Source: Selaginella moellendorffii (taxonomy: Eukaryota > Plantae > Lycopodiophyta). From it: a DNA stretch of 64,000 bases. Each line of letters starts with the position of its first letter. The stretch's first letter is position 1. Location: assembly GCF_000143415.4 (NCBI RefSeq), contig NW_003314283.1, positions 630,752 to 694,751 of the forward strand, in the 5' to 3' direction. Shown piece by piece: positions 5,982 through 56,647 of this stretch. The notes beneath the pieces were generated by a model. That model made no database searches, had not been told where the DNA came from, and saw only the letters and a list, made by a program, of their open reading frames with translations. The position numbers were made by a program, and so were the translations under genes.

Positions 5982-7604
5982 AAAGTTGGATGAGCATTTG
6001 AATAAACTACGCTGGTTTTATTAAACTAAAACTTTGTGAATCGTTTGATCAATATCTGGGCCTTCGCTTCTGTGCTTTCTTCTAGCTATGGCGTCCACAG
6101 CTTTTTCCGAAGGCCTCGAAACCTGGAAAAAGGAGATAAACGAGAAGAAACTGGCTTGAAAGGAGCTTTAGCTCTCGTGCCAACGAATTTTCAACAAACG
6201 AGAGATTTTTTCGAAGTTTGCAATGGAAGGATTCTTTCTGGGCTATAGTTTCTTCTTTTCTCAGAAACGAATTACAAGTCTTAAAAGGTGCTCATTCAAG
6301 CCTTTCAGTTTTTTTCCTCCAACGACAGTTGCAGCACGGCCTTCTGGACTTCAACATATTGCAAGTAAGTTACAAGCTTTCCTCCACTACTGTGAGAGAG
6401 GAAGTATATTGATAAAATTCACCAGCCATGTGGTATATTGACTATTGCTTTGCGGGCCATGAAACTTCATTGAAAAGAAAATAAAAAAGCATACTACCAC
6501 TCCTTTTTATGGTTAAAATAGGTGTAGGGTTTTGTCAGATAAATTTTGGGTACATGCATGAAGTTCAAAATAAAGTAGATTTATCAATAGCAATAACACT
6601 TAAATTGTTGCAATTGATTATATCCAAGAAGTAAAGTGGGTTGGAAGTAAGGTTAGGAGTTTGTAAATTGCTTCCTATACATCTATTAGATCAGAAATTT
6701 AAAGTGATTTTTGTGAAGTGATCTTAAGAGAATAGAGATTTATTGACTTTGAAGATGGAGAAGTTGTAAATATCACATTCTCTCAAGAAAATAAGTGGGT
6801 AATAAATGGCAATAGGTTTTAATTAGGGATTTTAGTGTGGCAATTATTCAAGTTGAGTTACAATAAAACTTCAAGTTAAACAATAAAATAATGATAATGT
6901 GATAAAATTCAAGTTGTTTATATGTAAGCTTCTAAATTTAGACTTTCTGATAGGTTACTAAATATCCCAAAACTCTTAACTAATTAAAAAAAGGGTGTAT
7001 TTTTATTATGGGCCTTTTCCTTTTATATTTGAACTTTTACGAATTAAGTTTTGCCAGATGTCAATCTCAATATATAACGTGATTCACTAAGCCAACTAAT
7101 AAAGTCAATTCCCAAAAAGTTCTCTAATATTAAATATAAACTCCTGAATTTAGACTTTCAAGAAGGTCATCTAACCTAATACTATTTAAATCCAAGGATG
7201 TTTAACCTCAATTATCTTAACACTCTTAACCAATTAAAAAAAAGGGTGCACTTTTGTTCATAAACTCTCTCCCTCTATATTTAAATATTTATAAATTGTC
7301 TTTCAAGTCATTCTCTTTAATTACTTCCAAAATCATTAACTAAGATAACATACCATTCTACCAAGTTAAATTGAAATTTCACTAGTACAAAAGAAAGTAA
7401 AATTCTCCAATATGGATCACAAATCACAAATCAGTAGATCATAAATTAATGAATCAACTAAAACTTGCTTGCTGGATTAAGGTGATAAAAAAAAAGTAAA
7501 AGCATTTGTCCTAAACTTTGGTAGTAAAAATATACCACAACCAGTAAATGATAAATATATTTCTATAAGTTGCCTAGTGTATGCTGGGTGGTTTACAAAG
7601 AGGT

Positions 7605-12738: not shown

Positions 12739-13658
12739 TGTAGCGCACGTGGTTTTGACCCTTTATCCTATGGTGATTTACCATAGGATAACACCACGAA
12801 GCGGAACCTAAACCCTCTTTGTGCCACGTGACAGATGCCACGTGTCATATGCCACGTGTCCATAAGAACCCGAGGTTCAGGGCCTTGGGCCACTGAACAA
12901 AGGAACAGTGCCAAACTCCCAAGCATGGAGCCAAGGAGTGACGGAACCGAACCACGGAGCAACTCCCAAGCATAAAGCCCAAGGAGCGAAGGGACAGGAG
13001 CCCAGAGCGACTTGGAACAGTCCTAGAGTAACCAGCATCCCAATGCCAGGACTAGCATGCAAAACGGAGCCAAACGGAGTCTGGCGCTATTTCGGCATAC
13101 CGGTGGCCTAACGCGAGGACATGGGTACTCCACCAACTAGCATGGAATGGAGCTTGGGCTTAGACCCAAGCCAAACGCAGAACAAGGACAGGCATGCAAG
13201 CGGGAGCTAAACTATGCCTCAGGTTGGTCGGCCATGCCCGACCTACCCACTATCCCTACTATACATTTGGAACCCCCCACAGCCCCCCCCCCCTTGAGGA
13301 ACACACGCTTTGGGCTTTCACCCCAAGCCTCCCTTAGTATCAGGAGTTAGTCTCTGGGACAAGCTCGAAACTTACTAAATATGGAATGTCCTTAAATTGC
13401 GAATTTGGACACGGGACGAACACCATTGTGTTCAGGACAATCTCTACATTCCGTAGATATACCAAATAAGCAAATCTAGACACTTTCCATAAATAGCATT
13501 TGGGACCGAAATGAGACTAACATAAAGGGCATGATAGCGAGGGTGTTTGGCAGACACGGTAAGCTATCATGTAGCGATATTGAGGGACCAATCTCAATAC
13601 GCGAGGGTTCTTGTCAAGCCAGTGCAAGACAGAGCAAAAGAGAACTAAAAAGCCAGGC

Positions 13659-14328
13659 TGTAGCGCATGTGATCATGGGATGAGATTTGGATATACTGTC
13701 ACCGTGGATCCTTGGAACCTTGGGGGATAAATAGGGATAAAATAGCCACTAAGGGCTCTCTTATCAAGCAATTGCCCCTTTTCCAGTTGGCTTAAGGGGA
13801 GAGAGATAAGGTGCACTACAGTTGGTATCGGAGCAAATGGCACAGGTTCGATTCCCATTGTATATTTATTAAAAATATAATATACCCTTGAGCAAGGTAT
13901 ATTCCTACCCCTAAATTTGAAATCGTACATATTGAGCATCTATGCGTACGTCCTTCCTCTTGTGTGGTGTATCCACGGACGAAGGTATCCACCGTGGGAC
14001 TGCAGTACAGGTGGATGACTAGTTGCCTCACATGGAATAGCTGGTCTACACAATGGAAGGATTGGTAGATTGAGTGTGGAAATGGAGGACATAATAAATA
14101 GTCAATGAGGACATTGACATCTCTAAAGGGGGGGTGAGTGTAGCGCATGTGATCATGAGATGAGATTTGGATATACTGTCACCGTGGATCCTTGGAACCT
14201 TAGGGGATACCGTGGATCCTTGGAACCTTAGGGGATAAATGGGGATAAAATAGCCACTAAGGGCTCTCTCATCAAGCAATTGCCCCTTTTCCAGTTGGCT
14301 TAAGGGGAGAGAGATAAGGTGCGCTACA
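13659..14328 (+). mobile_element. TRIM E inserted in the LTR of D
   Basis: TSD CAGGC. Terminal repeats 13659-13820 and 14139-14328, the second with a 28-bp internal duplication. PBS TGGTATCGGAGC, PPT AAAGGGGGGG, non-coding interior. Confidence 0.92.
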
Positions 14329-14899
14329 CAGGCCAAGTATGCTTGGCTGAATAGACACTTAGGAATTCCGTCCTTGTGCTCATCCGGCCAAGTACAGATG
14401 CAAAGTCCAATTTACTAACACTTGAACAAGAGGGGCTGATAAAAGGAACCAGCAATAAAGCTCTATTTCGTTAAAGTGGGAATTGTCATTATCCCACTTA
14501 TAAAATAAGGTTTCCAAACCTTTATATAGTATATAAATATAACAAAATTCAACTGCATTGAGGCACATGCCATTTTATTTTAAACAAGGAAATGTCTACT
14601 CAATCACTTCTCCTCCCCCTGCCACTGCTTCACCTCTCTCTTCTCCTTGTCATCGTCGTCCAATTTCTTTCCATCCTTTTAATATTGGCTCAGTTGCTCC
14701 GAGTCTAGGTGGAGCCCAAGTCCCCATTCAATCTTTACTTTCCCCTTATTAATAAAACAACTTCGTAGACTTCCAATAACATGCTGTAACACTTCTAGTA
14801 TAATGCAAATCCTCTCAAAGAATTGTCTTTTAATATTAATACAATGGCATGGAACCCCATGCCATAATAAGTTACATTTTTAAATAAATACATGCCATC

Positions 14900-15760: not shown

Positions 15761-16194
15761 CTCTGAAATGAAATGCGTCAGCATAAAAAATGGTACAAGT
15801 CAATTTTACCATCTACAATATTAGCGAATGGTGCTCCCGATGGTCGTTCAGAGGGTTTTGGTCGAGGAAACGTGAAGGGCGGAAATACTCTCCTCTACAA
15901 TGTGGGGTGTGGCGTGTGGGCACATGCCATTTCAGCTGTAGACTCTGGTACAACTGGCTCAACAGTGGCATGGGGTGGTTCCGATGGCGTGTGATCACAC
16001 GCCATTTCAGCTGGTGCCTCCGTTGGCAAAGTGGACATGACCGAACAGGAAGCAGGGGCGGTGTAGGGAGGTTCCAACGGCGCGTAGTCAGACGATTGGG
16101 CATACGTTGAGTCCGTTGGAAATGAGGATACGACTGTCAGGAATCCCCCAATTCTTGCCACATTCCTGACTCTTGCCGGATTCCTGACCTGCAG

Positions 16195-16312
16195 ACCACA
16201 TTCCTGATTCTCGAGACACTTCCCTATTCCTGACTCTCGAGACACTTCCATATTCCTGACTCTCGAGACACTTCCCTATTCCTGACTCTCGAGACACTTC
16301 CCGATTCCTGAG
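16195..16312 (+). repeat. 26-bp tandem repeat in the LTR of A
   Basis: (ACACTTCC[C/A]TATTCCTGACTCTCGAG)n; one unit fewer in the 3' LTR (~29565-29655). Confidence 0.85.
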
Positions 16313-17069
16313 TCTTGAGCCATATTCCTGATGATGATGTGGCGCCTCCTCGACCTCAGCTATATTTACGCCGTCCTCAATCCAAGAGTGGTGGAGCTTC
16401 ATCAACCTATAGTATATATAGGTTAGCCTTGTTCCATTTCTCCACAATCTGAATCAACACTAGTCTAAGGCTTGTTCTTTGTTTTCACTAGCTTTTTCTC
16501 TTTGTCTTTAGCATTTTCCAGTCTTGATCTTGTTGGGGGTCTTGATAGTTTGATTCAGATTGTGGTTTTTTTGCTTTTCTTTTAGCTCGTTTTGATTATT
16601 TGATTGCCTTTGTCTTTTTCCCCTTTCTTTTCTCTTGCCAATGGAGTCTCCAAGCCATCTTGATTTCTTTGCTGAAGTCCTTGCAAAAATCCAGTATGAG
16701 AATACCGAGCTGAAGGCGACCCTTCTTCGCATGCAGCAGGAGCTTGCTTCACTTTCGGCTCAAGGATCCAGCAAAGTTCCTGAACCGAAGGTGAGTTTCC
16801 CGGCGAAATTTTCAGGCAAGCGTTCAGAGCTTCGTGGATTTTTGAACCAAATGGAGCTGATCTTTGCACTTCAACATCGGCGGTACCCCACTCCCGAGTC
16901 TCAAATCGGCGCGATTGGGACGTTGCTCGAGGGTGCAGCTTTGTCATGGTTTTCTCCTCTTCTGGAGAAGAGCATGAAAGGGGTCTGTAAGGAACCAACT
17001 CGCCGAGGTGTCGTAGGCTAAGGGAACCCCGAAAGCATGACCAAAATGACAAAGAGTTCATCGGATGGG

Positions 17070-17340
17070 ACCAAGTCAAAGATCGAGTCCAAGACCGACT
17101 CTAGGACCGAGTTCGAGATAGAGTCCGGAATCGAGTCCAAGACCGACTCGGGGACCGAGTTCGAGTCCGAGTTCGAGACCGAGTTCGAGACGGAGTCCGA
17201 GATCCGAAATCGGGTCCGAGACCGAGTCCGAAGTCGAGTCCGAGGTCGGGCCCGAGATCGGGTCCGAGATCGAGTCCGCGATCGAGTCCGAGACCGAATC
17301 CGAAGTCGGATCTGAAATCGGATCCGAGATCGAGCCAGAG
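17070..17340 (+). repeat. Degenerate hexamer array (GAGTCC/GAGACC/GAGTTC) in the LTR of B; copy at ~23453-23723
   Basis: Directly visible; the source of spurious RDRV/ESE ORFs. Confidence 0.85.
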
Positions 17341-18192
17341 ACTAAGTCCAAATACTAATACGGGTCAAGGGGTGAAAGCCCAAAGCGTGCGTCCCCCAGG
17401 GGGGGGGGGCTGCAGGGGGTTCCAAAAGTATAGTAGGGATAGTGAGGTCCAGGAACCAGTTTTGAAGGGACTCTCCAGTTGGGCTTCCAAACCGACTTGA
17501 GGTTGGGACTGGGACTAAGGGGCCTTGGGTGGGAGTGAGCATGGACTTGGCTGGTGCCGGAGGGGCCATCCAAGGAAGTGCTCAAGAGCAGCTCCCACTC
17601 CCGAAAGGGAAACCGATTGCGGTGCTCCCGGCTCATGTGGAGTGGTGCCCCACTTGAGTACCATGCGGCTCATTGGTCCTCGCCCTTCCTAGGGGCTTGG
17701 GCCTTCCTTCGGGATGGAAGTGGGGGGCGAGAGGTACCCATGCCGGGCCGTTAGGCCACGGTGTTTCGCCCCGGCGTCCCGAAGCAAGTGTTGCACTCAA
17801 GACTTGGGATTTAGAGGGTCCCATGATCAAGTCTTGTGGTACCAAGGGATGTTAGGAACCTGGAAGCTTGGTGTGCTTGGCTGCTTGTGCTTGCGGGGAG
17901 TGTAGCCGAACCTTAAGTCCAGTCTAACCCGGGGAGGGGGATTGGGAGTGATTTGGGAATCCGTGGAAGGATGGCTAACACTCCGTTGCTCGTGCAGTGA
18001 GTAGCTGAAACCAAGTAGGAGCTGGTACCATAGGCGAGAACCTTGGCAAGGGAACTTAGCAAAAGCCAAGGCAGTGTTGGACGGATAGACGAGGTAAGCT
18101 GGCAAATTGGAAAGGAAAAATTTGTGGCTTACAATTTGGTATCGGAGCCTTTATCTCAGTTCTAGCGAAGGATAGAGGCGGATTGCTGGGAG

Positions 18193-21100
18193 ATGGCAAG
18201 GGCAGGGCGTAAGCGAACCCAGGCGGAGACGGAACCTCCGCCGGAGCTGGAGCCTCCGGTCGAACAAGAGGCTATGGATGAGGAATCCTTGCATGAGGAG
18301 GACTCTAGTGAGGAAACTTCCAAACAGGAGTCCGGTGGCGAGGTTCGGTCGTCCAAGGCTCGATTGGACGTGCTAGAAGGACAGTTGGCACAAACCAATG
18401 CCCTGCTGGAAACTCTCGTACGCAAGCTAAAGCGTGACGAGAGGCGGAAGAAAAAGAAAAAGACTGCGGATGCTGGCAGCGCAGAAGGTGCGGATCTTTC
18501 GGCCGGGACTGAGGCAAAACCAGACAAGGTCGAACAGACCGAAGTGGAATCAGTCCCTCAGGCAGTTCCCAAGTACAAACCAAAACCCCCACCGGTGTTC
18601 AAGGGAGTGAACGACTATAAGGTTGTGGAGGATTGGTTTTACGATATGGAGGACTACTTCCGAGCGTTGCGGTTACCGAGCTCGGAGAAGGTCCCATGTG
18701 CAAAACCATACTTGGCAGATAATGCCAAGTCTTGGTGGAGAACAACGGAGGCCAACGAAGGACCGGTGGCCACCTGGGACATGATGAAGGCGAGGATCCG
18801 CGCGACATACGTTCCTCCGAATGCCACTCTGCATCTGAGAGATGAGTTGAGTAGGCTGAAGCAGACTGGAACCATCCAGGAATATGTGAATGGGTTCATG
18901 GCAAAGAGGATACTTGTCACGGACATGGGGGATATGGATGCGTTCCATGCCTTTATATCAGGTTTGCAAACCTGGGCTCGCGGTGAGGTGATGCGCTGGA
19001 ACCCGACCAACTACAAGGAAGCGTTGGATGCGGCCATCAAGGTGCATTTCAACGATAACCTGCGAAAGGGGAACACGACGGGGTCGGGATCCACGTTTCA
19101 CAAAGGGGCCAAACCGAGGGGAACATATAGCAAGGGGAAATTCAAGAAGAGTTTCTCTAAGAATGAGTCCTCGGGGTTCCGGAAAGGCAAAGCCGGTGGC
19201 CAGCGAGCGAGTACGTGGGGAAGTCAAGCGAAAAAAGACAAACCCACGGATAAGAAGGTCAAGTCGTATAGCAGCGTGGGCAACAACGTATGCTACAACT
19301 GCGGCGAAGCGGGACACTTCTCGAGGGAATGTCCCTACCCGAAGAAGGCCAGAGCCAATATGGCCATCAAGTCGGGTGAAGTCCAAACTGAGGTATGTGA
19401 TCCAGTCCCCAACTCAAAGTTACTCATTACACGAGCAACTTTGGTAGAGAGTCGTTCGCGACATCTACTAGCCCTCCGAGGGAAGCTCGGAGGTAGCTTT
19501 GTTAAGATCCTTATTGACACGGGTGCTTCGGATAATTTTGTGGCTGCAGACATAGTCCGGCAAGCCGGACTAACGGTGCAGCGGCTAGGCGAACCAAGGA
19601 CTATAGAGTTTGTTCAAGGTAGCCAAAGCACCGATGAGGTACTTCGACAAGCGAGAGTCGAAGTGGGGACATGGAAAGTGGACATGGATTTCACCGTCTT
19701 GGACATGGCGGGATTTGACGTGATCTTCGGAATGGATTGGTTTAATCGGTTCGTGGTAGCCCTACATGGACAAGGTAGGAACCTTGTGGTATTGGCGAAT
19801 GCCCAAGGAAGAAGATCTAGGGTGGAGGCCCAGGATCTAAAGGTAGGGCAAAGCAAGGCCAAAGAGTCATGCTTAAACCTGGTGTCCACGAGAGGACAAC
19901 TCACTAAAGGAACTAAGGCAGCCTTTTTGTGCTTACTCTCGGTGAAGAGTGACAAAAAGACAAGAACGGAAGAAGTACCTTTAGTGATCCAGCAGGTGCT
20001 GGACCAATTCCAGGATACGATGCCGGAGGAGCTACCGGCGGGGTTGCCCCCCGCACGACCGATAGAACATAAGATTGAGCTGGTCGAGGGTGCTGAGGCG
20101 GTGGTTCGTCCACCCTATCGATTGAACGAAAAAGAACTCAAGGAGCTCAAGAGCCAACTAGAGGAGTTGGTGGACAAAGGGTATGTTAGGTTGAGCAAGT
20201 CGCCGTATGGGGCGCCGGTGCTATTTGTGAAAAAGAAAGATGGATCTATGCGCATGTGCATAGACTACCGGTTGCTCAACAAGTATACCAAGAAGAACAA
20301 GTACCCTTTGCCAAGGATCGAGGACCTGTTCGATAGGTTGGGAAAGGCAAAATACTTCTCGAGGATTGACCTAAGGTCAGGATACTACCAGATCAGGGTA
20401 GCTGAGGAAGATGTCGAGAAGACAACCTGTCGAACGAGGTATGGGAGCTTTGAGTTTTTGGTGATGCCCTTTGGGCTGTGCAATGCGCCGGCAACGTTTT
20501 CGGCGTTGATGAACCACATCTTTGTACCCTATCTGGATCGCTTCGTGGTCGTCTATATTGACGACATCCTGATCTATAGCGAGACGCTAGAGGAGCATGC
20601 CGAACACTTGGCGAAGGTGTTTGAGAAACTAAGGGAACACAAACTGTATGCTAAAGAGAGCAAATGTGACTTTGCTCAACAAGAGGTAAAGTTTCTCGGG
20701 CATGTGGTGGGCCAGGACGGGCTCAAGGTGGACCCGGAGAAGGTCCAAGCGATCCAGGAATGGGAACGACCATCGAATGTACATGAGTTGAGGGCGTTCC
20801 TGGGGCTATGCAACTACTATCGAAAGTTTATCAGACACTATTCGAGAGTAGCCCTGCCCTTAACGGACCAAACAGGAAAAGGGAAGATGGTATGGACAGC
20901 GGAATGCGAGGCAGCATTCGTCCACCTCAAAGGGAAGTTGAGGAAGGCTCCGGTGTTGGCCTTACCAGACTTTGGTAAAGACTTTGAGGTAGACACGGAT
21001 GCTTCGGACTTTGCGTTGGGCGCAGTTTTGAAGCAAGACAACCATCCAGTAGCGTTCTTCTCGAAGAAGCTGGACAAGGCTCAACGGAAGTGGCCTGCCC

Positions 21101-22965
21101 ACGAGAAGGAATTGTTTGCGGTGGTCAAGGCGCTCAAGGAGTGGCGACACTACCTTGGGAGACACTTCAAGGTTTACACGGACAATGTGGCAACGAAACA
21201 CTTCTTGTCACAGCCCGACCTAAGGGGAAAACAAGGTCGGTGGGCCAATGCTTTGGCCGAGTTTGATTGCGAGATCCTGTACAAGCCTGGGAAGAGCAAC
21301 ATCGTGGCAGATGCGCTCAGTCGAAAAGCGAGCTTGAAGTTGGCGATATCTAGCGCGACAGCAACCTTTTGGGACGATGTGCGGACCGCATACGAGAGTG
21401 ATGGTCTAGCACAAGAAGTGTTGCTGAGGAATCTGGAGGCGCGGGAAGCTCACCAGAGAGGTGAGCTGCCAACGGAAGAGAAAACGGGCTATGCGGAACG
21501 CAACGGACTCATATATTACAAGCAAACGAGGGTGTATGTTCCAGAAGGGGAACTAAGGAAGGTAGCCTTGGAAGAGTGTCATGACGGACCTCTCGCGGGA
21601 CACGGCGGAGTGCCCAAGACGATGGGCTTACTCAAAAGGAAGTATCACTGGCCAGATATGGCTAAGGACGTCCAAGACTATGTAAAGACATGTCCAACAT
21701 GTCAGCAGGTCAAAGCCGTGACGAAGGCTAGTGGGGGCTTGTTGCAAAGCATCCCCATCCCAGATCGTCCGTGGAAATGTCTCACGATGGACTTCATCAC
21801 GGGACTAACCCCAAGCGAGGGGTTCGATGCGATATTCGTGGTGGTGGACCGATTTTCAAAGATGGCACATTTCATACCCACCACAACGGATGTGGATGCG
21901 GAAGGTGTGGCGAAGCTGTTCTTCGAACAAGTGGTTCGAGTGCGGGGAAGGCCGGAAGAGATTATCTCAGATCGAGATAAGATCTTCACCAGTAGGTTCT
22001 GGAGGACACTCCTAGAACAGTATCGCACCAAGTTGAAATTCAGCACGGCCTATCACCCACAGACAGGTAATGGGTATTGAGTCAAGATTGATGGCACTAA
22101 CACTTCTTGACAGACGGACAAACGGAAAGGGTGAATAGGCAGCTGGAGGATTATTTGCGATGCTATGTCTCGGGAGACCAGACTGACTGGGTAAGTCATT
22201 TGGGACTTGCGGAAATGTGTTATAACAACTCACCACATTCGAGCATCGGGGTGAGTCCATGGGAAGTCATCAATGGGCGAGCTATTGAAGGTCCTGTGGA
22301 ACTCGGCGTGGCCGAGTATCATGGAGAGTTACCCGCAGTGGAGGCATTCACGGCGGAAAGACTCAACATTTGGAATCTAGTGAGGGATTCCTTGGAACGG
22401 GCTCAACAAAGGCAAACTAAGTACGCGAACCAAAAGCGTCGAGATGTGGAGTTCCAAGCTGGGGAGAAGGTGTGGCTGAACACCAAGAACCTCAGGCTAC
22501 CAAGTGGGATCAGCCGGAAGTTGACCCAAAGGTAAAAATGCATGTATTCCTGTAAATGAATTGATCTTGAGTTCCTTAAGCAGGTTCGCGGGGCCTTACG
22601 AGATTGAGGCTCGAATCGGTAAAGTGGCTTACCGTCTTCGACTTCCTCGAGAGATGGGGAAGATGCATCCCGTGTTCCACGTGAACTTACTCAAGCCGTA
22701 TTTTGAGGATCCGCTTCGCAAGGACCAAGTAAGACCTTTACCTGAGGTTATCCAAGGGGAGGAGGAATACGAAGTCGAGGCCATCCTCAATGCGCGCAAG
22801 AGCAAGCGACAAGGACGCGAGGTGAGAGAGTTCCATGTGAAGTGGAAAGGATTTCCACACTGCGAAGCAACATGGGAACCGGAGGAGAACCTAGCGAACG
22901 CGCGAGATCTAGTGGAGGAATTTCTGCATGGCAGAACTCTATGTACTTATGCAAAGTTCAATTAA
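18193..22965 (+). CDS. Gag-Pol of B (gag, CCHC, PR, RT, RNaseH, IN, chromodomain); exons 18193-22066, 22114-22531, 22584-22965
   Basis: Motifs [28 protein letters not shown] and HHCC. Removing two GT-AG introns restores AYHPQTDGQTER and KLTQRFAGPY. Chromodomain EYEVEAIL...VKWKGF...TWEP. Confidence 0.88.
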
Positions 22966-24516
22966 AAGTATCAATTTGAGAAGTTGAGCAATGGCATATG
23001 TTGGGACCCGAAGGCGCGCCGAAGGTAAGCTAATTAGCATGGGTTAGCTAGGTCGACCAGGCGTAGGGAGCTACGCCCGACTCCCTGCGGGGATGTCGAA
23101 TCCGTAGACGTATTCTACGGAGGTTGGGTTTGAGTCCCAACCCCCTAGTAAAGCAAGGCTGGGTTCAAGTCCCGACCCCATACTAGGGCGTGGTGAGGGG
23201 TGGAGTATAGGGACACCTATATTCCGTTGTCATGAGCTTTTGGCCGGGGAGGCTAACTTAGGCACACCGCTAAGTGGGGGGATGCCCCCGGAGACATGGT
23301 CAACAAGTCGTAGGATAAAAAAGAGACGTTCGATGTGGGCATCGAACTTCTTCTATGGGTGGTGGAGTTGTAAGGAACCAACTCGCCGAGGTGTCGTAGG
23401 CTAAGGGAACCCCGAAAGCATGACCAAAATGACAAAGAGTTCATCGGATGGGACCAAGTCAAAGATCGAGTCCAAGACCGACTCTAGGACCGAGTTCGAG
23501 ATAGAGTCCGGAATCGAGTCCAAGACCGACTCGGGGACCGAGTTCGAGTCCGAGTTCGAGACCGAGTTCGAGACGGAGTCCGAGATCCGAAATCGGGTCC
23601 GAGACCGAGTCCGAAGTCGAGTCCGAGGTCGGGCCCGAGATCGGGTCCGAGATCGAGTCCGCGATCGAGTCCGAGACCGAATCCGAAGTCGGATCTGAAA
23701 TCGGATCCGAGATCGAGCCAGAGACTAAGTCCAAATACTAATACGGGTCAAGGGGTGAAAGCCCAAAGCGTGCGTCCCCCAGGGGGGGGGGGCTGCAGGG
23801 GGTTCCAAAAGTATAGTAGGGATAGTGAGGTCCAGGAACCAGTTTTGAAGGGACTCTCCAGTTGGGCTTCCAAACCGACTTGAGGTTGGGACTGGGACTA
23901 AGGGGCCTTGGGTGGGAGTGAGCATGGACTTGGCTGGTGCCGGAGGGGCCATCCAAGGAAGTGCTCAAGAGCAGCTCCCACTCCCGAAAGGGAAACCGAT
24001 TGCGGTGCTCCCGGCTCATGTGGAGTGGTGCCCCACTTGAGTACCATGCGGCTCATTGGTCCTCGCCCTTCCTAGGGGCTTGGGCCTTCCTTCGGGATGG
24101 AAGTGGGGGGCGAGAGGTACCCATACCGGGCCGTTAGGCCACGGTGTTTCGCCCCGGCGTCCCGAAGCAAGTGTTGCACTCAAGACTTGGGATTTAGAGG
24201 GTCCCATGATCAAGTCTTGTGGTACCAAGGGATGTTAGGAACCTGGAAGCTTGGTGTGCTTGGCTGCTTGTGCTTGCGGGGAGTGTAGCCGAACCTTAAG
24301 TCTAGTCTAACCCGGGGAGGGGGATTGGGAGTGATTTGGGAATCCGTGGAAGGATGGCTAACACTCCGTTGCTCGTGCAGTGAGTAGCTGAAACCAAGTA
24401 GGAGCTGGTACCATAGGCGAGAACCTTGGCAAGGGAACTTAGCAAAAGCCAAGGCAGTGTTGGACGGATAGACGAGGTAAGCTGGCAAATTGGAAAGGAA
24501 AAATTTGTGGCTTACA

Positions 24517-27477
24517 AATAAGCCATTTAAGAACTCGAACTCGTCAAATCGCCGGCAGTCGGGAGTCACAGGGTGTCCAGCCTGAAGATGGGGGAAAATG
24601 TCGCTGGCGAGATCATCAGATTGAAGATCGTTTCTGATGGCATCCATCAAGGAGGAGTCCTGAGGGGCCAGGGAAATTGCCATAACCTGAAGCCGATCAG
24701 GACCGAGGATAATCTGATCCTGTTGATCGAAGGCAGGATTACCAGGCCTGAGACTGAGATAGGAGCGCCTTGAAAGAGCATCAAGAAGGCCTTGAAGCTT
24801 TCCAGGTCTGTACTTGATAACAAAGTCAAACCGACTCAGGAATTGTGCCCACCTTGCTTGACGACGGCTTAAAACTCGAGAAGTGGCAAAGTACTCGAGA
24901 TTTTTGTGATCCGTCCAGACTGTTGTTTGATGACTTGCCCCCTCCAAGAAACGACGCCACTCTCCAAAGGAATCCACGATGGCAAGGAGCTCCTTGTCGT
25001 GGATTTCATAATTGATCTCCGCAGGCTGGAATTTCCGAGAATGGAAAGCGACCGGATGAAGTTCTTGATCCGCTCCGAGTTGAGACAGCATAGCACCGAT
25101 GGCAAAGTCGGAGGCGTCAGCATCGATGAAGAAAGGTTGTGAGGAATCAGCATGGATCAAAACGGGAGCAGAACTGAAGGCTGCCTTGAGAGTGTCGAAG
25201 GCGTGCTAGGCAGCAGTAGACCAAGAGAAGGGGACATCCTTGCGAGTGAGATGCGTGAGAGGAAGAACAATGTCAGAGTAGTGATCAATGAATTTGCGGT
25301 AGAAGTTGGCGAAGCCAAGGAAAACCTGAACGTCCGACATTGATTGTGGAGGCTCCCACTCGAGAATAGTCTTGACTTTGGCAGGATCCATCGTGATACC
25401 CTCAGGAGTGACAACATACCCAAGGAACTCCACAGACTGCTGATCGAAGGAACATTTCTCAAGCTTCGCGTATAGGCCGTGTTCTCGCAACTTCGCCAGC
25501 ACCTTGCGTACATGTTTGTCGTGCTCCTCTTGAGTTCTTGAGTAGATGAGGATGTCATCGAGGTAGACAATAACCATCTGATCAAGAAACTCCCGAAAGA
25601 CGTCGTTCGCCATGTGTTGGAAAACTGCTGGAGCATTTGTCAAGCCAAATGGCATGACAGTGTACTTGAAGTGGCCATAGCGGGTTCGGAACGCAGTCTT
25701 CCATTCATCACCAGGCCGGATCCGGATCAGGTTGTATGCGCCACGGAGGTCAATCTTGGTGAAGAAGCGGGCACCGCCGAGATGTTCCAACAGGTCCGAG
25801 ATCAGGGGCAGCGGATAACGGTTCCGAACAGTCACCTTGTTCAAACCTCGGTAATCGATGACTAGCCGCAAACTCCCATCCTTCTTCTTGACAAAGAAGA
25901 CAGGCACTCCAGCCGGGGACTGCGAATGCTGAATGAACCCTGAGGCAAGGTTCTCATCCACGTACTCTTTGAGGGCCTTAAGCTCGGACGGGGATAACCC
26001 GTAGATAGGCCCCCACGGAGGCGACGCTCCTTCCTGTAAATCAATGGGACAGTCATAAGGCCGATGAGCAGGCAGTACACTAGCTTTTTTCTTGTCAAAC
26101 ACATCCCCAAAATCATGATACTTCTCAGGAAGACTGACAGGAAAAACATGCAAAGCAAAAAGAAAAATAGGTTCTTCATGAAGGAGTTCTTGCATAGTGA
26201 TTGTGGAGATAGGAGGAGGTGTACGACTAAATGGAATGATGAGACGAGGATACTGTCCAATGTAAGATGGAAGAGAGGAAAAAGAAGAGGGTGAAAACTT
26301 TGTAGAGTCAGGAACAGAACCCCGATTTGAGTTTAGGGAACTTTTCCTGATTCGGACTCGATGAACAGCAGGGGAAGCCGTGGGAGATGGTGATGTGGGA
26401 GAGATGAGCTGTAAATCCTTCCAACAAATCTGAGGCTGATGTAGCTGGAACCAAGGAAGACCGAGCACCACAGAGGAGGACTTGCTGTTGATGATGTTGA
26501 AGGCGATATCGGTGACGGTGGACCCAATGTGTACTCGAACGGGCAACATTTCCCTAAGTCCAGAAGATGGAGACACAAAATGCCCACCGATGCCTTCAAC
26601 CCTCAGATCCTGTATGGTAGGAGAAAGAGGAACGTGATGTCGGGCAGCAAAGTCCGTGTCCATGAAGCAGGAAGTTGCACCCGAGTCCAGTAGCGCCAAA
26701 GCCTTGAGTCCTGATTGTCCGGTGAAAGAAAGGAGACATGGGACGCGGAAGTTGCGGGAATTGGTGGTGGCTTTGATGAAAGGTGGTGAGGAGCTTGATA
26801 AGGAAGAAAAGTGATTTTTATTCAGGGAGTCCAAACAGACAGCTCCTACTCTGTTTGGACAGGGTCGTTTCCCGACTGCAAAAGAGGTGGACTTTGAGGC
26901 AGAGTGAACTCGAGCAATCGGGGAGGCTTCTTGGGACACACAGCTGCTTTGTGATTAGGATCAGCACAGTAGAGGCAAAGATTATGAGATATTCGACGTT
27001 GCCTCTCAGTAGGACTCAACTTCCCTCTAATGAGTCGGGGAGTACCAGAAATATCCATCGGGACCGGAGCAGTAGGTTCAGGACTATGCCCCGAAGACTC
27101 AAGCTGGGATTCCTGAGTCTGGGACGGAAAAACAGCGGCGCGGCGACTTTCCTGACGACGTTCAAAGAGACGATTGTCACATCGAACAGCTTTGTTGATG
27201 GCGTCCGACAGGTCCTTGGGATCCTCCATAGTGAGCAATAAATCCTTGACACCATTGTTGAGGCCGAAACGAAATTGGTCAATCAGGGCCCGCTCATCCC
27301 ACTGAGTGTCCAAGGCAAGGAGTTGGAACTCTGCAGCGTAGATCGAGGCAGGACGAGACCCCTGAGAGAGACGTCTCATCTTTGTGGTAGCAGCCCGAAC
27401 CCGATCCGTCTCGCCAAAACATGCTTCGAGCTTCTCTTTGAACAATTGAAGATCCATCAGCTCCGGAACCACGACCC
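24517..27477 (-). pseudogene. Inverted central gag-pol segment of A
   Basis: Gag zinc knuckle CLYCADPNHKAAVC, PR LLDSGA, RT YLDD and RNaseH DASD...DHKNL. Both ends join in frame to the + strand parts of A (KSMKG-VVVPEL; LNGLLYRGEQLYVP). Confidence 0.92.
26829..26873 (-). promoter_or_regulatory. -1 ribosomal frameshift signal at the gag/pol overlap of A
   Basis: Slippery G GGA AAC in the gag frame, a 6-nt spacer, then an 11-bp stem GTCCAAACAGA/TCTGTTTGGAC. The pol ORF lies in the -1 frame. Confidence 0.8.
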
Positions 27478-28070
27478 TGTAAGCAACCAAAGGGAACGAC
27501 TCGAGAGACGATCCATGGGGTTCAAATATAGAGGGAAAGGGCCCATGAACAAGAGTGCACCCCCTTTTCCAATCGGTTAAGGGTCTTGGGATATTTGGGG
27601 TTAAGCGTCCTTGGGCTTGAATAGTACTGGGCTGGGTGACCTCTCGGGAAGTCCAAACTCAGGAGCTTACATTTGGTATCAGAGCGGTCTTGGGTCCGAC
27701 TCTGTTGGTTGGCTAGGGGAATCACACCACATGTTGATTGACATCTGGCTGGTCCAGTTTGCTCCCGCTGGGCTCGACCCGAGGGGTAGGGTGTCAAGAG
27801 AGCGAGGCTCTCGGGAGAGCTGCGGCTCTCAGCTTCCGTTCACGAGGGCGTGAACTTGCAAGGAAGCGTGGTGGATTGTAAGCAACCAAAGGGAACGACT
27901 CGAGAGACGATCCATGGGGTTCAAATATAGAGGGAAAGGGCCCATGAACAAGAGTGCACCCCCTTTTCCAATCGGTTAAGGGTCTTGGGATATTTGGGGT
28001 TAAGCGTCCTTGGGCTTGAATAGTACTGGGCTGGGTGACCTCTCGGGAAGTCCAAACTCAGGAGCTTACA
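27478..28070 (+). mobile_element. Cassandra-type TRIM C (5S rRNA-like segment in its LTRs)
   Basis: Apparently identical 194-bp LTRs at 27478-27671 and 27877-28070, PBS TGGTATCAGAGC, 205-bp interior. A 5S internal-promoter-like segment lies at 27600-27654 and 27999-28053. Confidence 0.9.
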
Positions 28071-29890
28071 TTATTGTACCGTGGGGAGCAGCTTTACGTT
28101 CCTGAAGGTGATGCTCGAAGGTTGGTCCTAATGGCGTGCCACGATAGCCCGACTGCTGGTCACTTCGGCATTGCGAAAACCTATGAGCTAGTTGCACGGG
28201 ACTTTTGGTGGCCTCACATGGACGACTACATCAAAGCTTTTGTTACCTCCTGTGACACTTGCGCCCGGAATAAAGTACCTCGTCACCTTCCTTCAGGTTT
28301 GCTTCGTTCCCTTCCGGTCCCTTTAGGTCCTTGGGAATCCATCTCCATGGATTTCTTGAGTGATCTTCCGAGTTCTGGAGGCTTCAACAGCATTTTAGTC
28401 GTGGTGGATCGCTTCACAAAGATGGCGCACTTCTTGCCATGTACCAAGGAGTTTTCGGGCGAGGACATGGCAAAACTAGTATTCAGGGAAATTTTCTGAC
28501 TTCATGGGATTCCTACAGATGTGGTTTCGGATCGGGGGCCTCAGTTCATCTCTCATTTCTGGCAACGGTTTTTGCAGCTGCTTGGAGTGAAGGCCAACCT
28601 CTCTTCGGCGTATCATCCTCAAACTGATGGGCAGTCCGAGCGAACGATTCAGACGTTGGAACAATTCTTGAGGTGCTTCATCAACTATCATCAGGATAAC
28701 TGGTTCGATATCCTTCCCCTTGCTGAGTTCTCCTATAACAACTCTATTCACTCCTCTCTTCGAATTTCCCCCTTCTTTGCAAACTCTGGCCGAAATCCCC
28801 AATTCAATCTCTCACTTCCTTCTCCATCTGAATCCTCTCATTCAAATCCCTACTCTGAGGCATTTATCTCCAACCTCCAAGAAATTCACAACTCCATCTC
28901 CTTCCACCTCCATCGTGCTCAGGAATCTCACAAAACATTTGCCAATGTCCATCGTTAGGATTGTCCCCCTTACAATATCGGGGATAAAGTTTGGCTCCTC
29001 AGGCGAAATATCTCCACCACCAGGCCCTGTCCAAAACTTGATTTCAAACGCCTCGGTCCTTTCCCTATCACTGCCATCATTAATCCTGTCACTTATCGCC
29101 TTGCACTTCCCTCCTCATATCAAATTCACCCCGTTTTCCATTCCTCTCTCCTTGAGCCTTATATTCCCAGTCCTATTCCCAATCGGGTCATTCCTCCACC
29201 TCCACCAGTGCAGCTCGAGGATGGGTCTGAGTACGAGGTTCAGGACATCCTTGATTCCAAGATTTCACGGTCTAAACTCTACTATCTGGTGGACTGGAAG
29301 GGTTACGGGCCTGAAGAACGCACTTGGGAACCTGCAGACAACCTGATTCATTCTCCTGACCTTGTTCAGGACTTCCACCGCCGCTATCCTAGTCGTCTCA
29401 GTCCTCATTCTTTTTCTCCATCTCCCATCCCTCGCCGCTCATCTCATCCTCCTCGTCGTTCTCATTCACATCCTCGTTCCACTCGTTCTTGAGGAGGGGG
29501 TGCTGTCAGGAATCCCCCAATTCTTGCCACATTCCTGACTCTTGCCGGATTCCTAACCTGCAGACCACATTCCTGATTCTCGAGACACTTCCATATTCCT
29601 GACTTTCGAGACACTTCCCTATTCCTGACTCTCAAGACACTTCCCGATTCCTGAGTCTTGAGCCATATTCCTGATGATGATGTGATGCCTCCTCGACCTC
29701 AGCTATATTTACGCCGTCCTCGATCCAAGAGTGGTGGAGCTTCATCAACCTATAGTATATATAGGTTAGCCTTGTTCCATTTCTCCACAATCTGAATCAA
29801 CACTAGTCTAAGGCTTGTTCTTTGTTTTCACTAGCTTTTTCTCTTTGTCTTTAGCATTTTCCAGTCTTGATCTTGTTGGGGGTCTTGACA

Positions 29891-32800
29891 ACGACCGGCT
29901 CGGCGGCTGGGGCGGCCTCATGCGGGTCCAATGGCGCCTGGTCACCGTCAGTTGGATACGTGGACAAGATTGACTCAGTGGTATGGGCAACATCAAGTGG
30001 AGCATGGTTAGCTTGCTTGGTGTTGATATGGATAGTAGCCTCCACCAGCTCTGATGACTCTTGCAGGCAAGTAGAGTCCACTGGCAGATCCATATGCATG
30101 TCCAAATATCTCCCTTCGATTGAGATGGTATCCTCCCTACTGGCTACTAAAAACAAACTCATTAGCACATTGAATCGACTATACTGTATTTACCATCAAC
30201 TGCTATTGAGGAACTAGGACCGATATCACTTGGGCGCACTGCTGATTCTGAAGGATTGGACATACGTTTCGACCCTTGCTTGGCACTATCCTTCCTCGAC
30301 ACTAAAGGCTAGAGTTTGAATCTTAATTCAACTGAATAATCTCTACTTACCATTTGCTTTGCGACCTACATGGACAATGTTAGAAATGGTAAAAGGTTAG
30401 GAATGGATGTACTATTATTTACCTGATGGTTTGTCTTGTATGACCTTCCTTCGCTGCTCTTTGGCCACCTCAGGCTGGCCATCGTCGTCATCATCGTCGT
30501 CATCGTTATTGTGATCGTCATCATTGTGAGGACCATCCAAGTCCTCTTCGTCCTCCTCTTCTTTGTCCTCCTCTTCGTCCTTCTGCTCTTCCTGCTCATT
30601 ATTTTTCTCTGGCTCCTCATCCCCCTCCTGCATTTCTTCCATAGGTTGCTTAGGCTGGATGGCTTGTTCTTCCAGGACCATCTTGGGAAAATCATCTGGC
30701 CGAGTCTTCATCTCAAAATACAAGACATCCATAGCTTGTTTTAGTGCGTGACCTAGGACCGTATCCTCACCCGACTGTCTTAACATGGTTTCTGCACGTT
30801 CTTGCACCCTTCGAAGACGACGAGATGAGAAAAACATGGCCCTAACTTGAAAAGCATCCCTCATCCATTGTACCTCTCCATTGAGATTGGGGAAGGGGAG
30901 TCTGCTATAGGAATCTGAGTCAGGAGGTGGTGACCGCGAGGCATTACCTATCATCTTTTCGTTGCCCTTCTTCCTTTTCGAATCAAACGCCTCTGATCCC
31001 GACGACTGTCCAACGTGCTTTCGCTTTTTATGACCACTGTCAGTTTGAGCTTGGCTGGTGCTTGCCTGTTTTGCCTTTGAAGAAGTGTCTCCTGTAAGGA
31101 ATGGCATGAGACCACACGCCATTGCAAATATAATTTGTACCTCCTTTTTTCCTATTGCTTGTTTGTTTGTCCTTCTTCGACGCACCACCAGTGCGCTTTT
31201 CAGTCCTCGTGTCTGAATATTCACAACGATCTATAATCAAAATGGCGTGAGGCCTCACGTGACCTTACCTTGTGCAGGTTGTGAGCTCGGCCCAACATGG
31301 GTATCTTCAACAGTAGCTGTTAACGCCGTTTCAGCATCTGGGGGTGGCCACACTCCTGCATACAGAGCTTGTGAGATAACATTTAAACTTAAAGTGCGTA
31401 CTCACCAGGTTCGCAGAGAAGATATTGTTTTTCTTTGGCAACTGTAATTATATGCTTCATTGAAGTCACCTCTTCAATGGAGTTTGTCACCGCAACACAC
31501 GGGACACCTTTGAGTAGTGTGGCTCGAAAGAATAGTCCGCTGTAGTTGTACTCGACAACGCATTTGCCCTTGGAGTCGGAAGCAGGTGCTATTGCGTTGA
31601 AGACCCAACTGAGCATTTCCCATGCTGCACCTGGAGCTTTCTCTGGATTCGAAAGCTCCATAGCTGTCTTCAGTTCCTCAGGCACGGGTAAATTGACCTC
31701 CCTCAGATCAATTCGATCGGCCTTGTCGAACGAAGCTGGGAAGTCACTCCAGTCCCACTCTGCTGCAGGACCAATAACAAGGGCGAGTGTGAAGATGCGG
31801 ACATTCATCGATATCTTCTTCTTAGCCATTATCCCATGGATCTCCTACATCTCCTTGCCTTTCAACCGAGCCTTCACCTCGTTCAAGGCCTTCCAGAACT
31901 TGTGATAGGATTCGGAGTCATAGATCATATAGTGGACTGAAGATTCCACCTCCGCAAGTCCCACCATTAAGTCAATGATGGAGCTGACTTCGTCTGCATG
32001 AGTGATCTCCTCGTTTGTGAAGTCCATCACACAAAAGATGTTCTTGACCTGCTCATCTCCGCGGGAAACGATGCTCCTCCACCTTTGATCCTCATCTGAA
32101 TTCACGTATACCCGGTAAGGTTCTCGATAGGTCTCTGCTGCGGGGTTTCTGAAGCCGGCGGTCGACATCCCTCTTAATGAAATTTGGATACTGATCCAAC
32201 TTCTCAGCTTTACTTTTCATGGCATCCCGCAGTAGATCGATGAACTTGGGGGCCCCCTTCACGTAGTCGTCGATGTCTTCATTTGACAACTCCAGCTCTT
32301 CCATCATCTCTTGCGTGGTGTCGATGCTCACCCTCTCCACGGCCACTTGCTCGAAGATCCAATCCTTCAATAGCACACGAGCTCTCAGAGTCGTGCACAA
32401 GTCCTCGTATGTCACAATATGGCCGGGAGTCATTTTGGTCTTGTTGAAGACTACCTCACCACGTAGAAGAGCATTAGCCACTGTCAGAAGGTCGTCGTCG
32501 TCTAGAGACCGCGAGAAACGCAAGGCGTTGAGCTTCAAATCATTGGGCTTCCGGCCGTCCTCCACACCCATTGAGTTTAGCAACTCCCCGTCATGGTACC
32601 TCCTCAGCACATCTACCCATTTGTCAAAAACAACTTTTGTCGCGAGTAGAATGTTATGGATGCTGAGTGTGTCATTGACCCCCAGTGTTTTCGAGAGAAG
32701 ACTTGAGAATTCCTGCAATGGAAATGGCGTGAGGCCACATGCTATGCCACATGCAATGAGGCTTACCTGCCAGGCGCTAGTTGCTAGTGCACGTCCTTGT

Positions 32801-42104: not shown

Positions 42105-42464
42105 TATGAGACACAAAATCCCTAGGCCCCAAAGTGGAGCCGGAAAGGGTGCCACGTGGTAGTGGCCGAAGCGAAAGCCAAACGAGCATAACACGTTTGG
42201 ACTAAAAGCTCCGACTTGGAAGGTCGAAAGCGGGAGTGGAACTCCCAACAAAGTGCTCGAGGAGCAAGCACGAGACAACCAATAAGAAAGGCTCCAAAAA
42301 GGGACCCAAAAAGGACCAACACATGACACATGGAAGTGTCCGAGATGGAGTCCGAGGCGGACCCGAGTTGGAGTCCGAGATAGACCCGAGATGGAGTCCG
42401 AGATGGACTGAGACGGAGTCCGAGATGGACCCGAGATGGAGTCTGAGGTCGAGACCGAGACCGG

Positions 42465-42499
<35 letters not shown>

Positions 42500-56645: not shown

Positions 56646-56647
56646 TA

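What the first reader, a model, noticed from the sequence alone, without database searches (positions are those of the whole stretch)
16981..28075. Swapped TSDs around a 3 kb inversion: two different retro-cDNAs apparently integrated together with crossed ends
Seen: GGGTC|B|AATAA-[inverted A segment]-GACCC|C|TTATT. Each 5-bp target is duplicated but shared between B and C: the left ends take GGGTC and the right ends take TTATT. Both elements are intact, in the same orientation and non-homologous except at the tips, so ordinary ectopic recombination does not fit. Inference: two intasomes each paired one B end with one C end, cutting about 2.96 kb apart and inverting the middle in a single event. 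Alternatives are an exact inversion through the 6-bp terminal TGTAAG/CTTACA, or misassembly.
Basis: partly seen in the sequence, partly recalled or inferred. Interest (0 to 1): 0.82.

Follow-up and report, generated by a model that had tools for sequence, protein, structure and literature searches.

The report
Inversion with swapped retrotransposon target duplications
In a spikemoss genome, a 7.5-kb retrotransposon and an unrelated 0.6-kb miniature one sit either side of a flipped 3-kb stretch of a third, dead retrotransposon, and each has swapped one of its two flanking 5-base target duplicates with the other, a footprint best explained by both DNA copies being inserted in one event with their ends cross-paired.

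Summary
GGGTC|B(16986-24516)|AATAA ... GACCC|C(27478-28070)|TTATT. Each 5-mer's partner is its reverse complement beside the other element (chance about 1e-6).

The window is Selaginella moellendorffii scaffold GL377587.1.
- B is a Ty3/gypsy chromovirus with 1148-bp LTRs that differ at 2 sites. Its pol carries two frameshifts, so it is not fully "intact".
- C is a 593-bp TRIM with identical 194-bp LTRs.
- Both lie inside an older Ty3/gypsy element, H (16135-29890, TSD ACGAC). H's gag-PR-RT-RNase H segment, A (24517-27477), is inverted relative to H's ends.

At the TTATT junction, four comparator proteins show nothing lost or gained beyond the 5-bp duplication. At the GGGTC junction only the reading phase could be checked.

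Classical recombination between inverted homologous copies is excluded. B and C lie in the same orientation and have no inverted similarity beyond a 7-bp tip. Thousands of equal or better inverted microhomologies exist inside H.

The best reading (about 0.5) is one integration episode in which two integrase complexes each joined one B end and one C end. A later exact inversion (about 0.28) and an artefact (about 0.07) remain open. No second allele or close H copy could be reached.

The parts
16130..16134 (.). Left copy of H's own target-site duplication (ACGAC)
   Evidence: the same 5-mer follows the 3' LTR at 29891-29895.
16135..29890 (+). H, the host Ty3/gypsy LTR retrotransposon. It is 13,756 bp as it stands and about 5.6 kb without B, C and the two extra 5-mers. 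It is nested in a larger minus-strand element, G.
   Evidence: Searches give the LTR pair, the tips TGTCAG..TTGACA and the 5-bp TSD. One search gives the lengths.
16135..16547 (+). H 5' LTR (413 bp)
   Evidence: it differs from the 3' LTR by 6 mismatches and a 26-bp indel.
16635..29396 (+). H gag-pol, given as one part because it is a broken gene. The outer pieces read on the + strand and the middle piece (within 24517-27477) on the - strand. Breaks, counts only: 2 nested insertions (B, C), 1 inversion, 3 in-frame stops in pol, and 1 gag/pol frame change that may be the element's normal one.
   Evidence: One search gives the Pfam domains on each piece. Searches give counts and outer bounds only.
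16981..16985 (.). GGGTC, the 5-mer abutting B's left tip. Its partner is GACCC at 27473-27477.
16986..24516 (+). B, a 7531-bp Ty3/gypsy chromovirus-type LTR retrotransposon with tips TGTAAG..CTTACA
16986..18133 (+). B 5' LTR (1148 bp), containing 12-bp tandem repeats
   Evidence: 2 mismatches to the 3' LTR.
18137..18148 (+). B primer-binding-site-like motif TGGTATCGGAGC, 3 nt after the LTR
   Evidence: one mismatch to the motif of C.
18193..22965 (+). B gag-pol, given as one part. Domains: gag, zinc knuckle, protease, RT, RNase H, integrase, SH3-like, chromodomain. It is interrupted by 2 frameshifts and has no in-frame stop.
   Evidence: One search gives the domains. Searches give the counts.
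23357..23368 (+). B polypurine-tract-like end (GGGTGGTGGAGT) abutting the 3' LTR
   Evidence: This, together with the LTR start, is the only significant forward similarity to C (23359-23381).
23369..24516 (+). B 3' LTR
24517..24521 (.). AATAA, the 5-mer abutting B's right tip. It is the reverse complement of TTATT at 28071-28075.
24517..27477 (-). A, the 2961-bp segment of H that is inverted. It codes gag (C-terminal part), protease-RT and RNase H on the minus strand.
27473..27477 (.). GACCC, the 5-mer abutting C's left tip. It is the reverse complement of GGGTC at 16981-16985.
27478..28070 (+). C, a 593-bp terminal-repeat retrotransposon in miniature (TRIM) with no coding capacity and tips TGTAAG..CTTACA
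27478..27671 (+). C 5' LTR (194 bp)
   Evidence: identical to the 3' LTR.
27674..27685 (+). C primer-binding-site-like motif TGGTATCAGAGC, 2 nt after the LTR
27860..27876 (+). C polypurine-tract-like stretch ending GTGGTGGAT at the 3' LTR
27877..28070 (+). C 3' LTR (194 bp)
28071..28075 (.). TTATT, the 5-mer abutting C's right tip
29504..29890 (+). H 3' LTR (387 bp)
29891..29895 (.). Right copy of H's TSD (ACGAC)

Best explanation
One integration episode with cross-paired ends.

Two reverse-transcribed DNAs were present together: a B-family chromovirus cDNA and a C-family TRIM cDNA. Their four ends were synapsed by integrase in the wrong partnership. One integrase-DNA complex held the two left (U3) ends, B-left with C-left, and attacked H at GGGTC. 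The other held the two right (U5) ends, B-right with C-right, and attacked H at TTATT, 2956 bp away.

Each complex made the normal pair of strand transfers, 5 bp apart, so each target 5-mer was duplicated as usual. Its two copies, however, ended up beside ends of different elements. Following the joins gives H-left - B - (middle segment reversed) - C - H-right. That is exactly what is seen, with every LTR tip joined through its CA-3' end to a 5-mer copy.

The 593-bp C cDNA would tether the two complexes within about 200 nm, which fits target sites about 3 kb apart in chromatin.

Shown:
- the anatomy and the exactness of the TTATT junction;
- the absence of homology that could drive recombination;
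- the youth of both insertions relative to H.

Inferred:
- that the insertions were simultaneous;
- the cross-pairing itself;
- that one integrase, supplied in trans because B's own pol is frameshifted and C has no genes, accepts both kinds of tip.
For: (1) The swapped, reverse-complement 5-mers have a chance of 1.2e-6.

(2) The middle segment is an inverted piece of the same H element. At the TTATT site the last residue of the RNase H piece and the first residue of the integrase piece map to the same residue of each of the four closest full-reach comparators, P0172, P0169, P0164 and P0168. So there is an exact 5-bp duplication with nothing lost. At GGGTC the codon phase matches.

(3) All four ends are complete TG..CA tips directly abutting the 5-mers. 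A 5-bp duplication is the size H itself made. This is an integrase signature, not an end-joining one.

(4) There is no inverted similarity between B and C (score 23 against shuffles 23.3 +/- 1.9). They lie in the same orientation, and each element's own LTR pair is at least 99.8% identical, so neither is chimeric.

(5) B and C share tips that H and G do not: TGTAAGnAACCAA at the start and GCTTACA at the end. They also share the last PPT bases. This is compatible with one integrase handling both.

(6) Both are young (2/1148 and 0/194 LTR differences) and younger than H (6 mismatches plus an indel in about 390 bp).

(7) Precedent for the chemistry exists. Coordinated integration of two separate donor molecules is the standard in-vitro retroviral assay (PMC2857682). 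TRIMs are abundant in this species, and the TRIM-related large element found there is Ty3/gypsy (PMC4717578).
Against: - This is a single locus. No allele, haplotype or read evidence could be reached, and the other haplotype scaffold fetched (L001) lacks this TE cluster.
- LTR identities cannot separate "same event" from "two events close in time".
- No in-vivo case of two different LTR-retroelement cDNAs integrating with exchanged partners turned up in the literature searches, so the prior is unknown.
- The B-C kinship is thin. The LTRs are 1148 and 194 bp with only the tips alike, whereas published TRIM/partner pairs share 79-98% LTR identity. The PBS motif is also found next to element G, so co-packaging is not supported specifically.
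- The GGGTC junction could not be verified to the residue, because H's gag loop there is 5 residues longer than in the closest comparators.
Confidence: 0.5

Rival explanations
1. Two ordinary, separate insertions, each with its own direct TSD, were followed later by an exact inversion. Its breakpoints lie at B's right tip and C's left tip. It went through the 7-bp inverted identity GCTTACA/TGTAAGC, or through some nuclease that cuts at LTR tips.
For: Reversing the middle segment in thought gives each element a normal direct TSD. The two facing tips are inverted repeats of 7 bp, 9 of 10. LTR ages do not exclude different insertion times.
Against: Seven base pairs is far below what reciprocal homologous recombination uses. 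Inside H there are 7836 inverted 7-mer pairs (3341 spaced 1-5 kb) and 2125 pairs of 8 bp or more, so hitting exactly the two element tips is a roughly 1-in-3000 to 1-in-8000 coincidence. Both new junctions are exact to the base, which two-break end joining rarely gives. No enzyme is known to cut integrated LTR ends that lie 3 kb apart; that statement rests on my own knowledge.
Confidence: 0.28
2. Assembly or cloning artefact in the 2011 Sanger whole-genome shotgun assembly, which holds both haplotypes. The true locus would have the middle segment in H orientation.
For: The window is part of an old draft assembly, GCA_000143415.2 scaffold GL377587.1. B's LTRs (1148 bp) are longer than a Sanger read. 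I could not see reads.
Against: There is no gap (N) anywhere in the window. No long inverted repeat flanks the segment that could mislead an assembler. C is only 593 bp, so single reads should span it with both flanks. The junction sequences B-tip|AATAA and GACCC|C-tip must exist in reads. The 5-mers and the reading phase fit a biological event too neatly for a random misjoin.
Confidence: 0.07
3. Two double-strand breaks in H were repaired by end joining. The excised piece was re-ligated backwards and a free cDNA was captured at each break.
For: Capture of retroelement cDNA at breaks is known (for example PMC4516963, listed). The topology would fit.
Against: End joining does not make 5-bp target duplications. 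It would rarely keep all four LTR tips complete and add no filler. The 11-12 bases next to the tips have no other copy in the window.
Confidence: 0.05
4. Classical ectopic homologous recombination between two inverted homologous copies, the usual meaning of exchanged TSDs.
For: The exchanged-TSD pattern is the one described for Galileo-mediated inversions (PMC2775673).
Against: B and C are in the same orientation. They have no inverted similarity above shuffles. Neither is chimeric, because the LTR pairs within each element are 99.8-100% identical.
Confidence: 0.02

Closest known systems
Inversions with exchanged TSDs made by ectopic recombination between inverted homologous transposon copies (Galileo in Drosophila buzzatii, PMC2775673)
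   Same: An inverted segment is bracketed by two elements whose flanking target duplicates are exchanged and reverse-complemented.
   Different: That mechanism needs two homologous copies in opposite orientation and leaves chimeric copies. Here the two elements are unrelated (7.5-kb chromovirus and 0.6-kb TRIM), co-oriented and non-chimeric.
Hybrid element insertion and reversed-ends (alternative) transposition of P and Ac/Ds DNA transposons (reviewed in PMC2775673; PMC1592236, PMC8225341)
   Same: One transposition reaction uses ends that belong to two different element copies. The outcome is an inversion or deletion next to the elements, without homology.
   Different: Those use chromosomal donor copies of one family that are cut out by a transposase, and they leave one new TSD at the new site. 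Here the donors would be two free cDNAs of different families. Two target sites are each duplicated, and no donor site is involved.
Coordinated (concerted) integration of two separate donor DNA molecules by retroviral integrase in vitro (cited in PMC2857682)
   Same: An integrase complex joins ends from two different DNA molecules to one target with the canonical stagger. Like-with-like end pairs are accepted; that last point rests on my own knowledge.
   Different: That is a test-tube reaction with short identical donors. Here a natural chromosomal footprint would need two such complexes acting on two cDNAs of different families.
Aberrant retroviral integration with rearranged host DNA (PMC5041404)
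   Same: Integration is accompanied by inversion, deletion or duplication of adjacent host sequence.
   Different: There one end is integrated by integrase and the other by host repair. The canonical end or the short duplication is lost, and a single provirus is involved. Here four canonical ends and two canonical 5-bp duplications are present.
TRIMs and chromodomain Ty3/gypsy elements of Selaginella moellendorffii (PMC4717578, PMC3350952)
   Same: C fits the TRIM definition and B fits a chromovirus. Both kinds are already reported as abundant in this species.
   Different: Published TRIM/partner pairs share most of the LTR. B and C share only the tips, a PBS-like motif and the end of the PPT.

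Membership tests
Exchanged-TSD inversion by ectopic homologous recombination | Two homologous element copies at the breakpoints | tested here: not met
   the only similarity above shuffles is about 23 bp at PPT/LTR start in forward orientation; blastn finds no B-C match.
Exchanged-TSD inversion by ectopic homologous recombination | Copies in opposite orientation | tested here: not met
   PBS follows the left LTR and PPT precedes the right LTR on the + strand in both elements.
Exchanged-TSD inversion by ectopic homologous recombination | Exchanged, reverse-complemented TSDs | tested here: met
Exchanged-TSD inversion by ectopic homologous recombination | Both copies chimeric | tested here: not met
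   B's LTR pair has 2/1148 differences and C's has 0/194. Each element is internally coherent.
Hybrid-end (two-donor) integration by a DDE integrase or transposase | Each target duplication is shared between ends of two different elements | tested here: met
Hybrid-end (two-donor) integration by a DDE integrase or transposase | Canonical element tips and canonical duplication length at every junction | tested here: met
   TG..CA tips and 5 bp, as for H's own TSD.
Hybrid-end (two-donor) integration by a DDE integrase or transposase | No host bases lost or gained other than the duplications | tested here: inconclusive
   The TTATT junction is exact in four comparators. At the GGGTC junction only the phase could be tested, and the gag loop is 5 residues longer than in the closest comparators.
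Hybrid-end (two-donor) integration by a DDE integrase or transposase | Both insertions arose in one event | not testable with these tools
   This needs alleles, accessions or reads. The other haplotype scaffold lacks the cluster.
Ty3/gypsy chromovirus (element B) | LTRs, PBS, PPT; gag-PR-RT-RNase H-IN order; C-terminal chromodomain | tested here: met
   (RVT_1, RT_RNaseH, Integrase_H2C2, rve, SH3_Tf2-1, Chromo).
Ty3/gypsy chromovirus (element B) | Uninterrupted gag-pol (autonomy) | tested here: not met
   two frame changes within pol.
TRIM (element C) | Under 1 kb, short LTRs, PBS and PPT, no coding capacity | tested here: met
   593 bp, 194-bp LTRs, a 205-bp interior with PBS- and PPT-like ends. 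One search lists no ORF of 100 aa or more lying within C.
TRIM (element C) | Own direct 5-bp TSD | tested here: not met
   GACCC on the left and TTATT on the right.
Aberrant one-ended retroviral integration | One end joined by host repair, with loss of the canonical end or of the short duplication | tested here: not met
   all four ends are canonical.

The most novel reading that the evidence does not exclude
This would be a natural, in-vivo footprint of four-ended cross-paired integration. Two cDNAs of different LTR-retroelement families shared one pre-integration assembly, and their integrase paired like ends of unlike molecules. The result was a homology-free chromosomal inversion made in a single step.

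If general, LTR-retroelement integrases would be direct makers of small inversions. By the alternative pairing they would also make deletions that leave one element flanked by two different 5-mers. Some "TSD-less" LTR elements now ascribed to recombination would instead be products of this reaction.
Probability: 0.45. Interest if true: 0.8.

Novelty: new variant of a known kind. Interest (0 to 1): 0.64.

Why it matters
Swapped or missing TSDs around LTR retrotransposons are routinely read as proof of homologous recombination between elements, and they are used that way to estimate DNA-removal rates in plant genomes. This locus shows the same footprint between two elements that cannot have recombined.

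If cross-paired integration is the cause, three things follow:
- Retroelement integrases can rearrange chromosomes directly, as P and Ac/Ds transposases do.
- Two cDNAs can meet in one integration complex in vivo.
- A class of small inversions and deletions in TE-rich genomes has a different origin from the one assumed.

The idea is directly testable by descriptive genomics, because the reaction predicts specific sister products.

Tried and rejected
- **Homology between B and C in either orientation** (blastn; Smith-Waterman with shuffles). There is none in inverted orientation, so classical recombination is rejected.
- **Exact look-ups of window proteins.** These covered B's longest ORF and nine ORFs around H. 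None is on record, so no second copy or allele was reached that way.
- **Word searches with B's polyprotein and H's PR-RT piece** and the big representative search with H's gag piece. No H- or B-family copy was found. The best matches were 42% for B, 75% over half for H's RT, and 63% over half for H's gag.
- **The other haplotype** (L001, GL377593.1). It shares only window 58.4-64 kb and an 89-bp stretch, with no H, B or C. Walking further along that scaffold was not possible under the look-up rule.
- **Local template for the bases next to the tips.** None was found.
- **Rfam, tRNA and bacterial promoter/terminator scans**. Nothing was found, and the last is irrelevant to a plant.
- **Literature**. 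No report was found of two different LTR retroelements integrating with exchanged partners.

Steps left out by rule:
- I did not reverse segment A, remove B or C, or join H's pieces in any script or query. The pieces were always compared apart.

- Checkpoint note 1 gives bounds of ORFs inside B that border its interruptions. It was written before I saw that they were breaks, and it is left undeleted.
- While working I also reasoned with ORF coordinates of B and H that imply where their breaks lie. This report gives counts only.
Full report
**1. What is there**

GGGTC (16981-16985) abuts the TGTAAG start of element B (16986-24516). B's CTTACA end abuts AATAA (24517-24521). GACCC (27473-27477) abuts the TGTAAG start of element C (27478-28070). 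C's CTTACA end abuts TTATT (28071-28075). Neither element has a direct target-site duplication. The 5-mer left of B is the reverse complement of the 5-mer left of C, and the 5-mer right of C is the reverse complement of the one right of B. The composition-aware chance of this is 1.2e-6.

**2. The three elements**

- **B** is a 7531-bp Ty3/gypsy element. Its 1148-bp LTRs differ at 2 positions. It has a PBS-like motif 3 nt after the 5' LTR and a PPT-like stretch before the 3' LTR. Its gag-pol carries gag, zinc knuckle, protease, RT, RNase H, integrase, an SH3-like domain and a chromodomain. Its pol is interrupted by two frameshifts, so it is complete in structure but not in reading frame.
- **C** is 593 bp, with identical 194-bp LTRs and a 205-bp interior that begins with TGGTATCAGAGC and ends in a purine-rich stretch. 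It codes for nothing. It is a TRIM, a class reported as abundant in this species (PMC4717578).
- **H** is the host, a third, older Ty3/gypsy element (16135-29890). Its LTRs are at 16135-16547 and 29504-29890 (6 mismatches and a 26-bp indel), its tips are TGTCAG..TTGACA, and it has its own 5-bp TSD, ACGAC. H in turn sits inside a larger minus-strand LTR element, G.

**3. The inversion is real at the level of H's genes**

- Left of B, H codes on the + strand for the N-terminal part of gag. Right of C it codes on the + strand for integrase.
- The 2961 bp between B and C code on the minus strand for the rest of gag, protease-RT and RNase H.
- I compared the pieces apart and never joined them.
- At the TTATT site, the four closest comparators whose alignments reach the very ends of both pieces are P0172, P0169, P0164 and P0168 (55-61% identity). 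In each, the last residue of the RNase H piece and the first residue of the integrase piece fall on the same comparator residue. This is what an exact 5-bp duplication predicts, with nothing lost or added.
- At the GGGTC site both copies are in the same codon phase, but a residue-exact check failed. H's capsid loop there is 5 residues longer than in the closest comparators, a difference seen in 56 of 114 comparators. Loop length does vary in the family, with offsets from -7 to +6.
- The H-left|B junction is an ordinary integrase junction under every model, so most of those extra residues must be native to H. The point limits verification but does not favour one model.
- H is a dead copy. Besides the two insertions and the inversion, its pol carries three in-frame stops, and there is one gag/pol frame change that may be normal.

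**4. Where the window comes from**

- The glyoxal-oxidase gene at the right end led to NCBI assembly GCA_000143415.2.
- The window equals scaffold GL377587.1 (100% over 11.5 kb; window position + 630,751 = scaffold position).
- The accession range is that of Selaginella moellendorffii.
- The allelic scaffold GL377593.1 is 96-98% identical over window 58.4-64 kb. It then departs, and it holds none of H, B or C in the 21.6 kb I could fetch.
- The window has no gaps.

**5. Excluding the usual explanation**

Exchanged TSDs normally mean recombination between two homologous copies in opposite orientation, which leaves chimeric copies (PMC2775673). That is not the case here:
- B and C are co-oriented.
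- The best inverted local alignment of C against all of B scores 23, against 23.3 +/- 1.9 for shuffles. The only forward similarity above shuffles is about 23 bp at the PPT/LTR-start boundary.
- Each element's own LTR pair is 99.8-100% identical.

The facing tips (B right, C left) are inverted repeats of 7 bp. H, however, contains 7836 inverted 7-mer pairs and 2125 pairs of 8 bp or more. An inversion driven by microhomology alone would have landed on precisely the two element tips only about once in several thousand. It would also need both junctions to be exact.

**6. The mechanism I think most likely (about 0.5)**

- All four ends are complete TG..CA tips joined directly to 5-bp duplicates. 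That is the signature of concerted strand transfer by an integrase, not of end joining.
- Following the chemistry, each LTR end is joined through its CA-3' to the 5' side of the target 5-mer. The observed order H-left - B - reversed A - C - H-right results if one complex held B-left with C-left and cut at GGGTC, while a second held B-right with C-right and cut at TTATT.
- Any other pairing gives a different product. Normal pairing gives two ordinary insertions. Left-with-right cross pairing gives either a deletion with a free circle or an inversion with C reversed.
- Integrases accept two separate donor molecules in vitro (PMC2857682).
- B and C share tips (TGTAAGnAACCAA at the start, GCTTACA at the end) that H and G lack. 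One trans-acting integrase could therefore plausibly handle both.
- The short C cDNA would hold the two complexes close together, which fits sites 3 kb apart.

What is inferred and not shown: that the insertions were simultaneous, the cross-pairing itself, and any co-packaging. The B-C kinship is thin. Published TRIM/partner pairs share most of the LTR, and the PBS motif is common to G as well.

**7. Rivals**

- A later, exact tip-to-tip inversion after two normal insertions (about 0.28). It cannot be excluded without alleles. It lacks a known enzyme and carries the coincidence penalty above.
- An assembly artefact (about 0.07). This is unlikely: there are no gaps, no flanking inverted repeats, and C is short enough for single reads to span it.
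- Break repair with cDNA capture (about 0.05). This does not predict 5-bp duplicates or intact tips.
- Classical recombination (about 0.02). This is refuted.

**8. Comparison with what is known**

- The footprint looks like the Galileo-type exchanged-TSD inversion, but it fails three of that mechanism's four defining features.
- In logic it works like hybrid element insertion or reversed-ends transposition of P and Ac/Ds. It differs in using free cDNAs of two families and two target sites.
- It differs from aberrant one-ended retroviral integration (PMC5041404) in keeping all the canonical features.
- My searches found no report of such an event for LTR retroelements in vivo. The library is limited to open-access text.

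**9. Verdict**

I rate it a new variant of a known kind (hybrid-end integration) and not a new category. Interest is moderately high because it challenges the routine reading of swapped or missing TSDs and makes specific predictions that can be checked by description alone.

**10. Rule compliance**

- No reversal, excision, joining, consensus or mending of any element was done.
- Breaks are given as counts.
- The bench test of the mechanism is not described and is listed as referred.

Noticed in passing
window 12739-14457 and 47662-48710 (with 47648-47661): LTR pair (97% identical) of a large minus-strand element, G, that encloses H and much else (about 36 kb). The left copy carries about 670 extra bp, including a 508-bp tandem duplication (13701-14328). 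A PBS-like TTTGGTATCAGAGAG lies on the minus strand next to the right copy. I saw no matching 5-bp TSD for G.
   Followed up: partly
window 49499-58430; L001 15435-15607: An AT-rich block of about 8.9 kb with a Helitron_like_N ORF (51292-52191, minus strand) is absent from the other haplotype scaffold, where the two flanks are adjacent. A second Helitron-like AT-rich block with a PIF1 helicase ORF (8181-9479, minus strand) lies at about 6-12 kb.
   Followed up: partly
window about 6960-7330, minus strand: A degenerate C-family TRIM copy, 71-79% identical. Most of its differences are C-to-T or G-to-A, and it lies inside the AT-rich block. The C family therefore has older members here.
   Followed up: partly
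window 17053-17376 and 23436-23759; also 42335-42643, 13248-13357, 48171-48285: There are arrays of a 12-bp tandem repeat inside B's LTRs. Related repeat blocks occur in a fragment at 42.3 kb (same strand) and in G's LTRs (opposite strand).
   Followed up: no
window 16974-16985 and 27467-27477: H's capsid loop at the GGGTC target is 5 residues longer than in the closest 50-63% identical comparators. An H-specific length difference thus coincides with the integration site. It is unexplained and does not discriminate between the models.
   Followed up: partly
window 58569-64000; L001 13762-19817: The host genes at the right end are a glyoxal oxidase (62416-64000, minus strand, running off the window) and an FMO-like gene. 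The other haplotype carries two FMO-like copies where this one has one copy plus fragments (56.6-57.5 kb).
   Followed up: no
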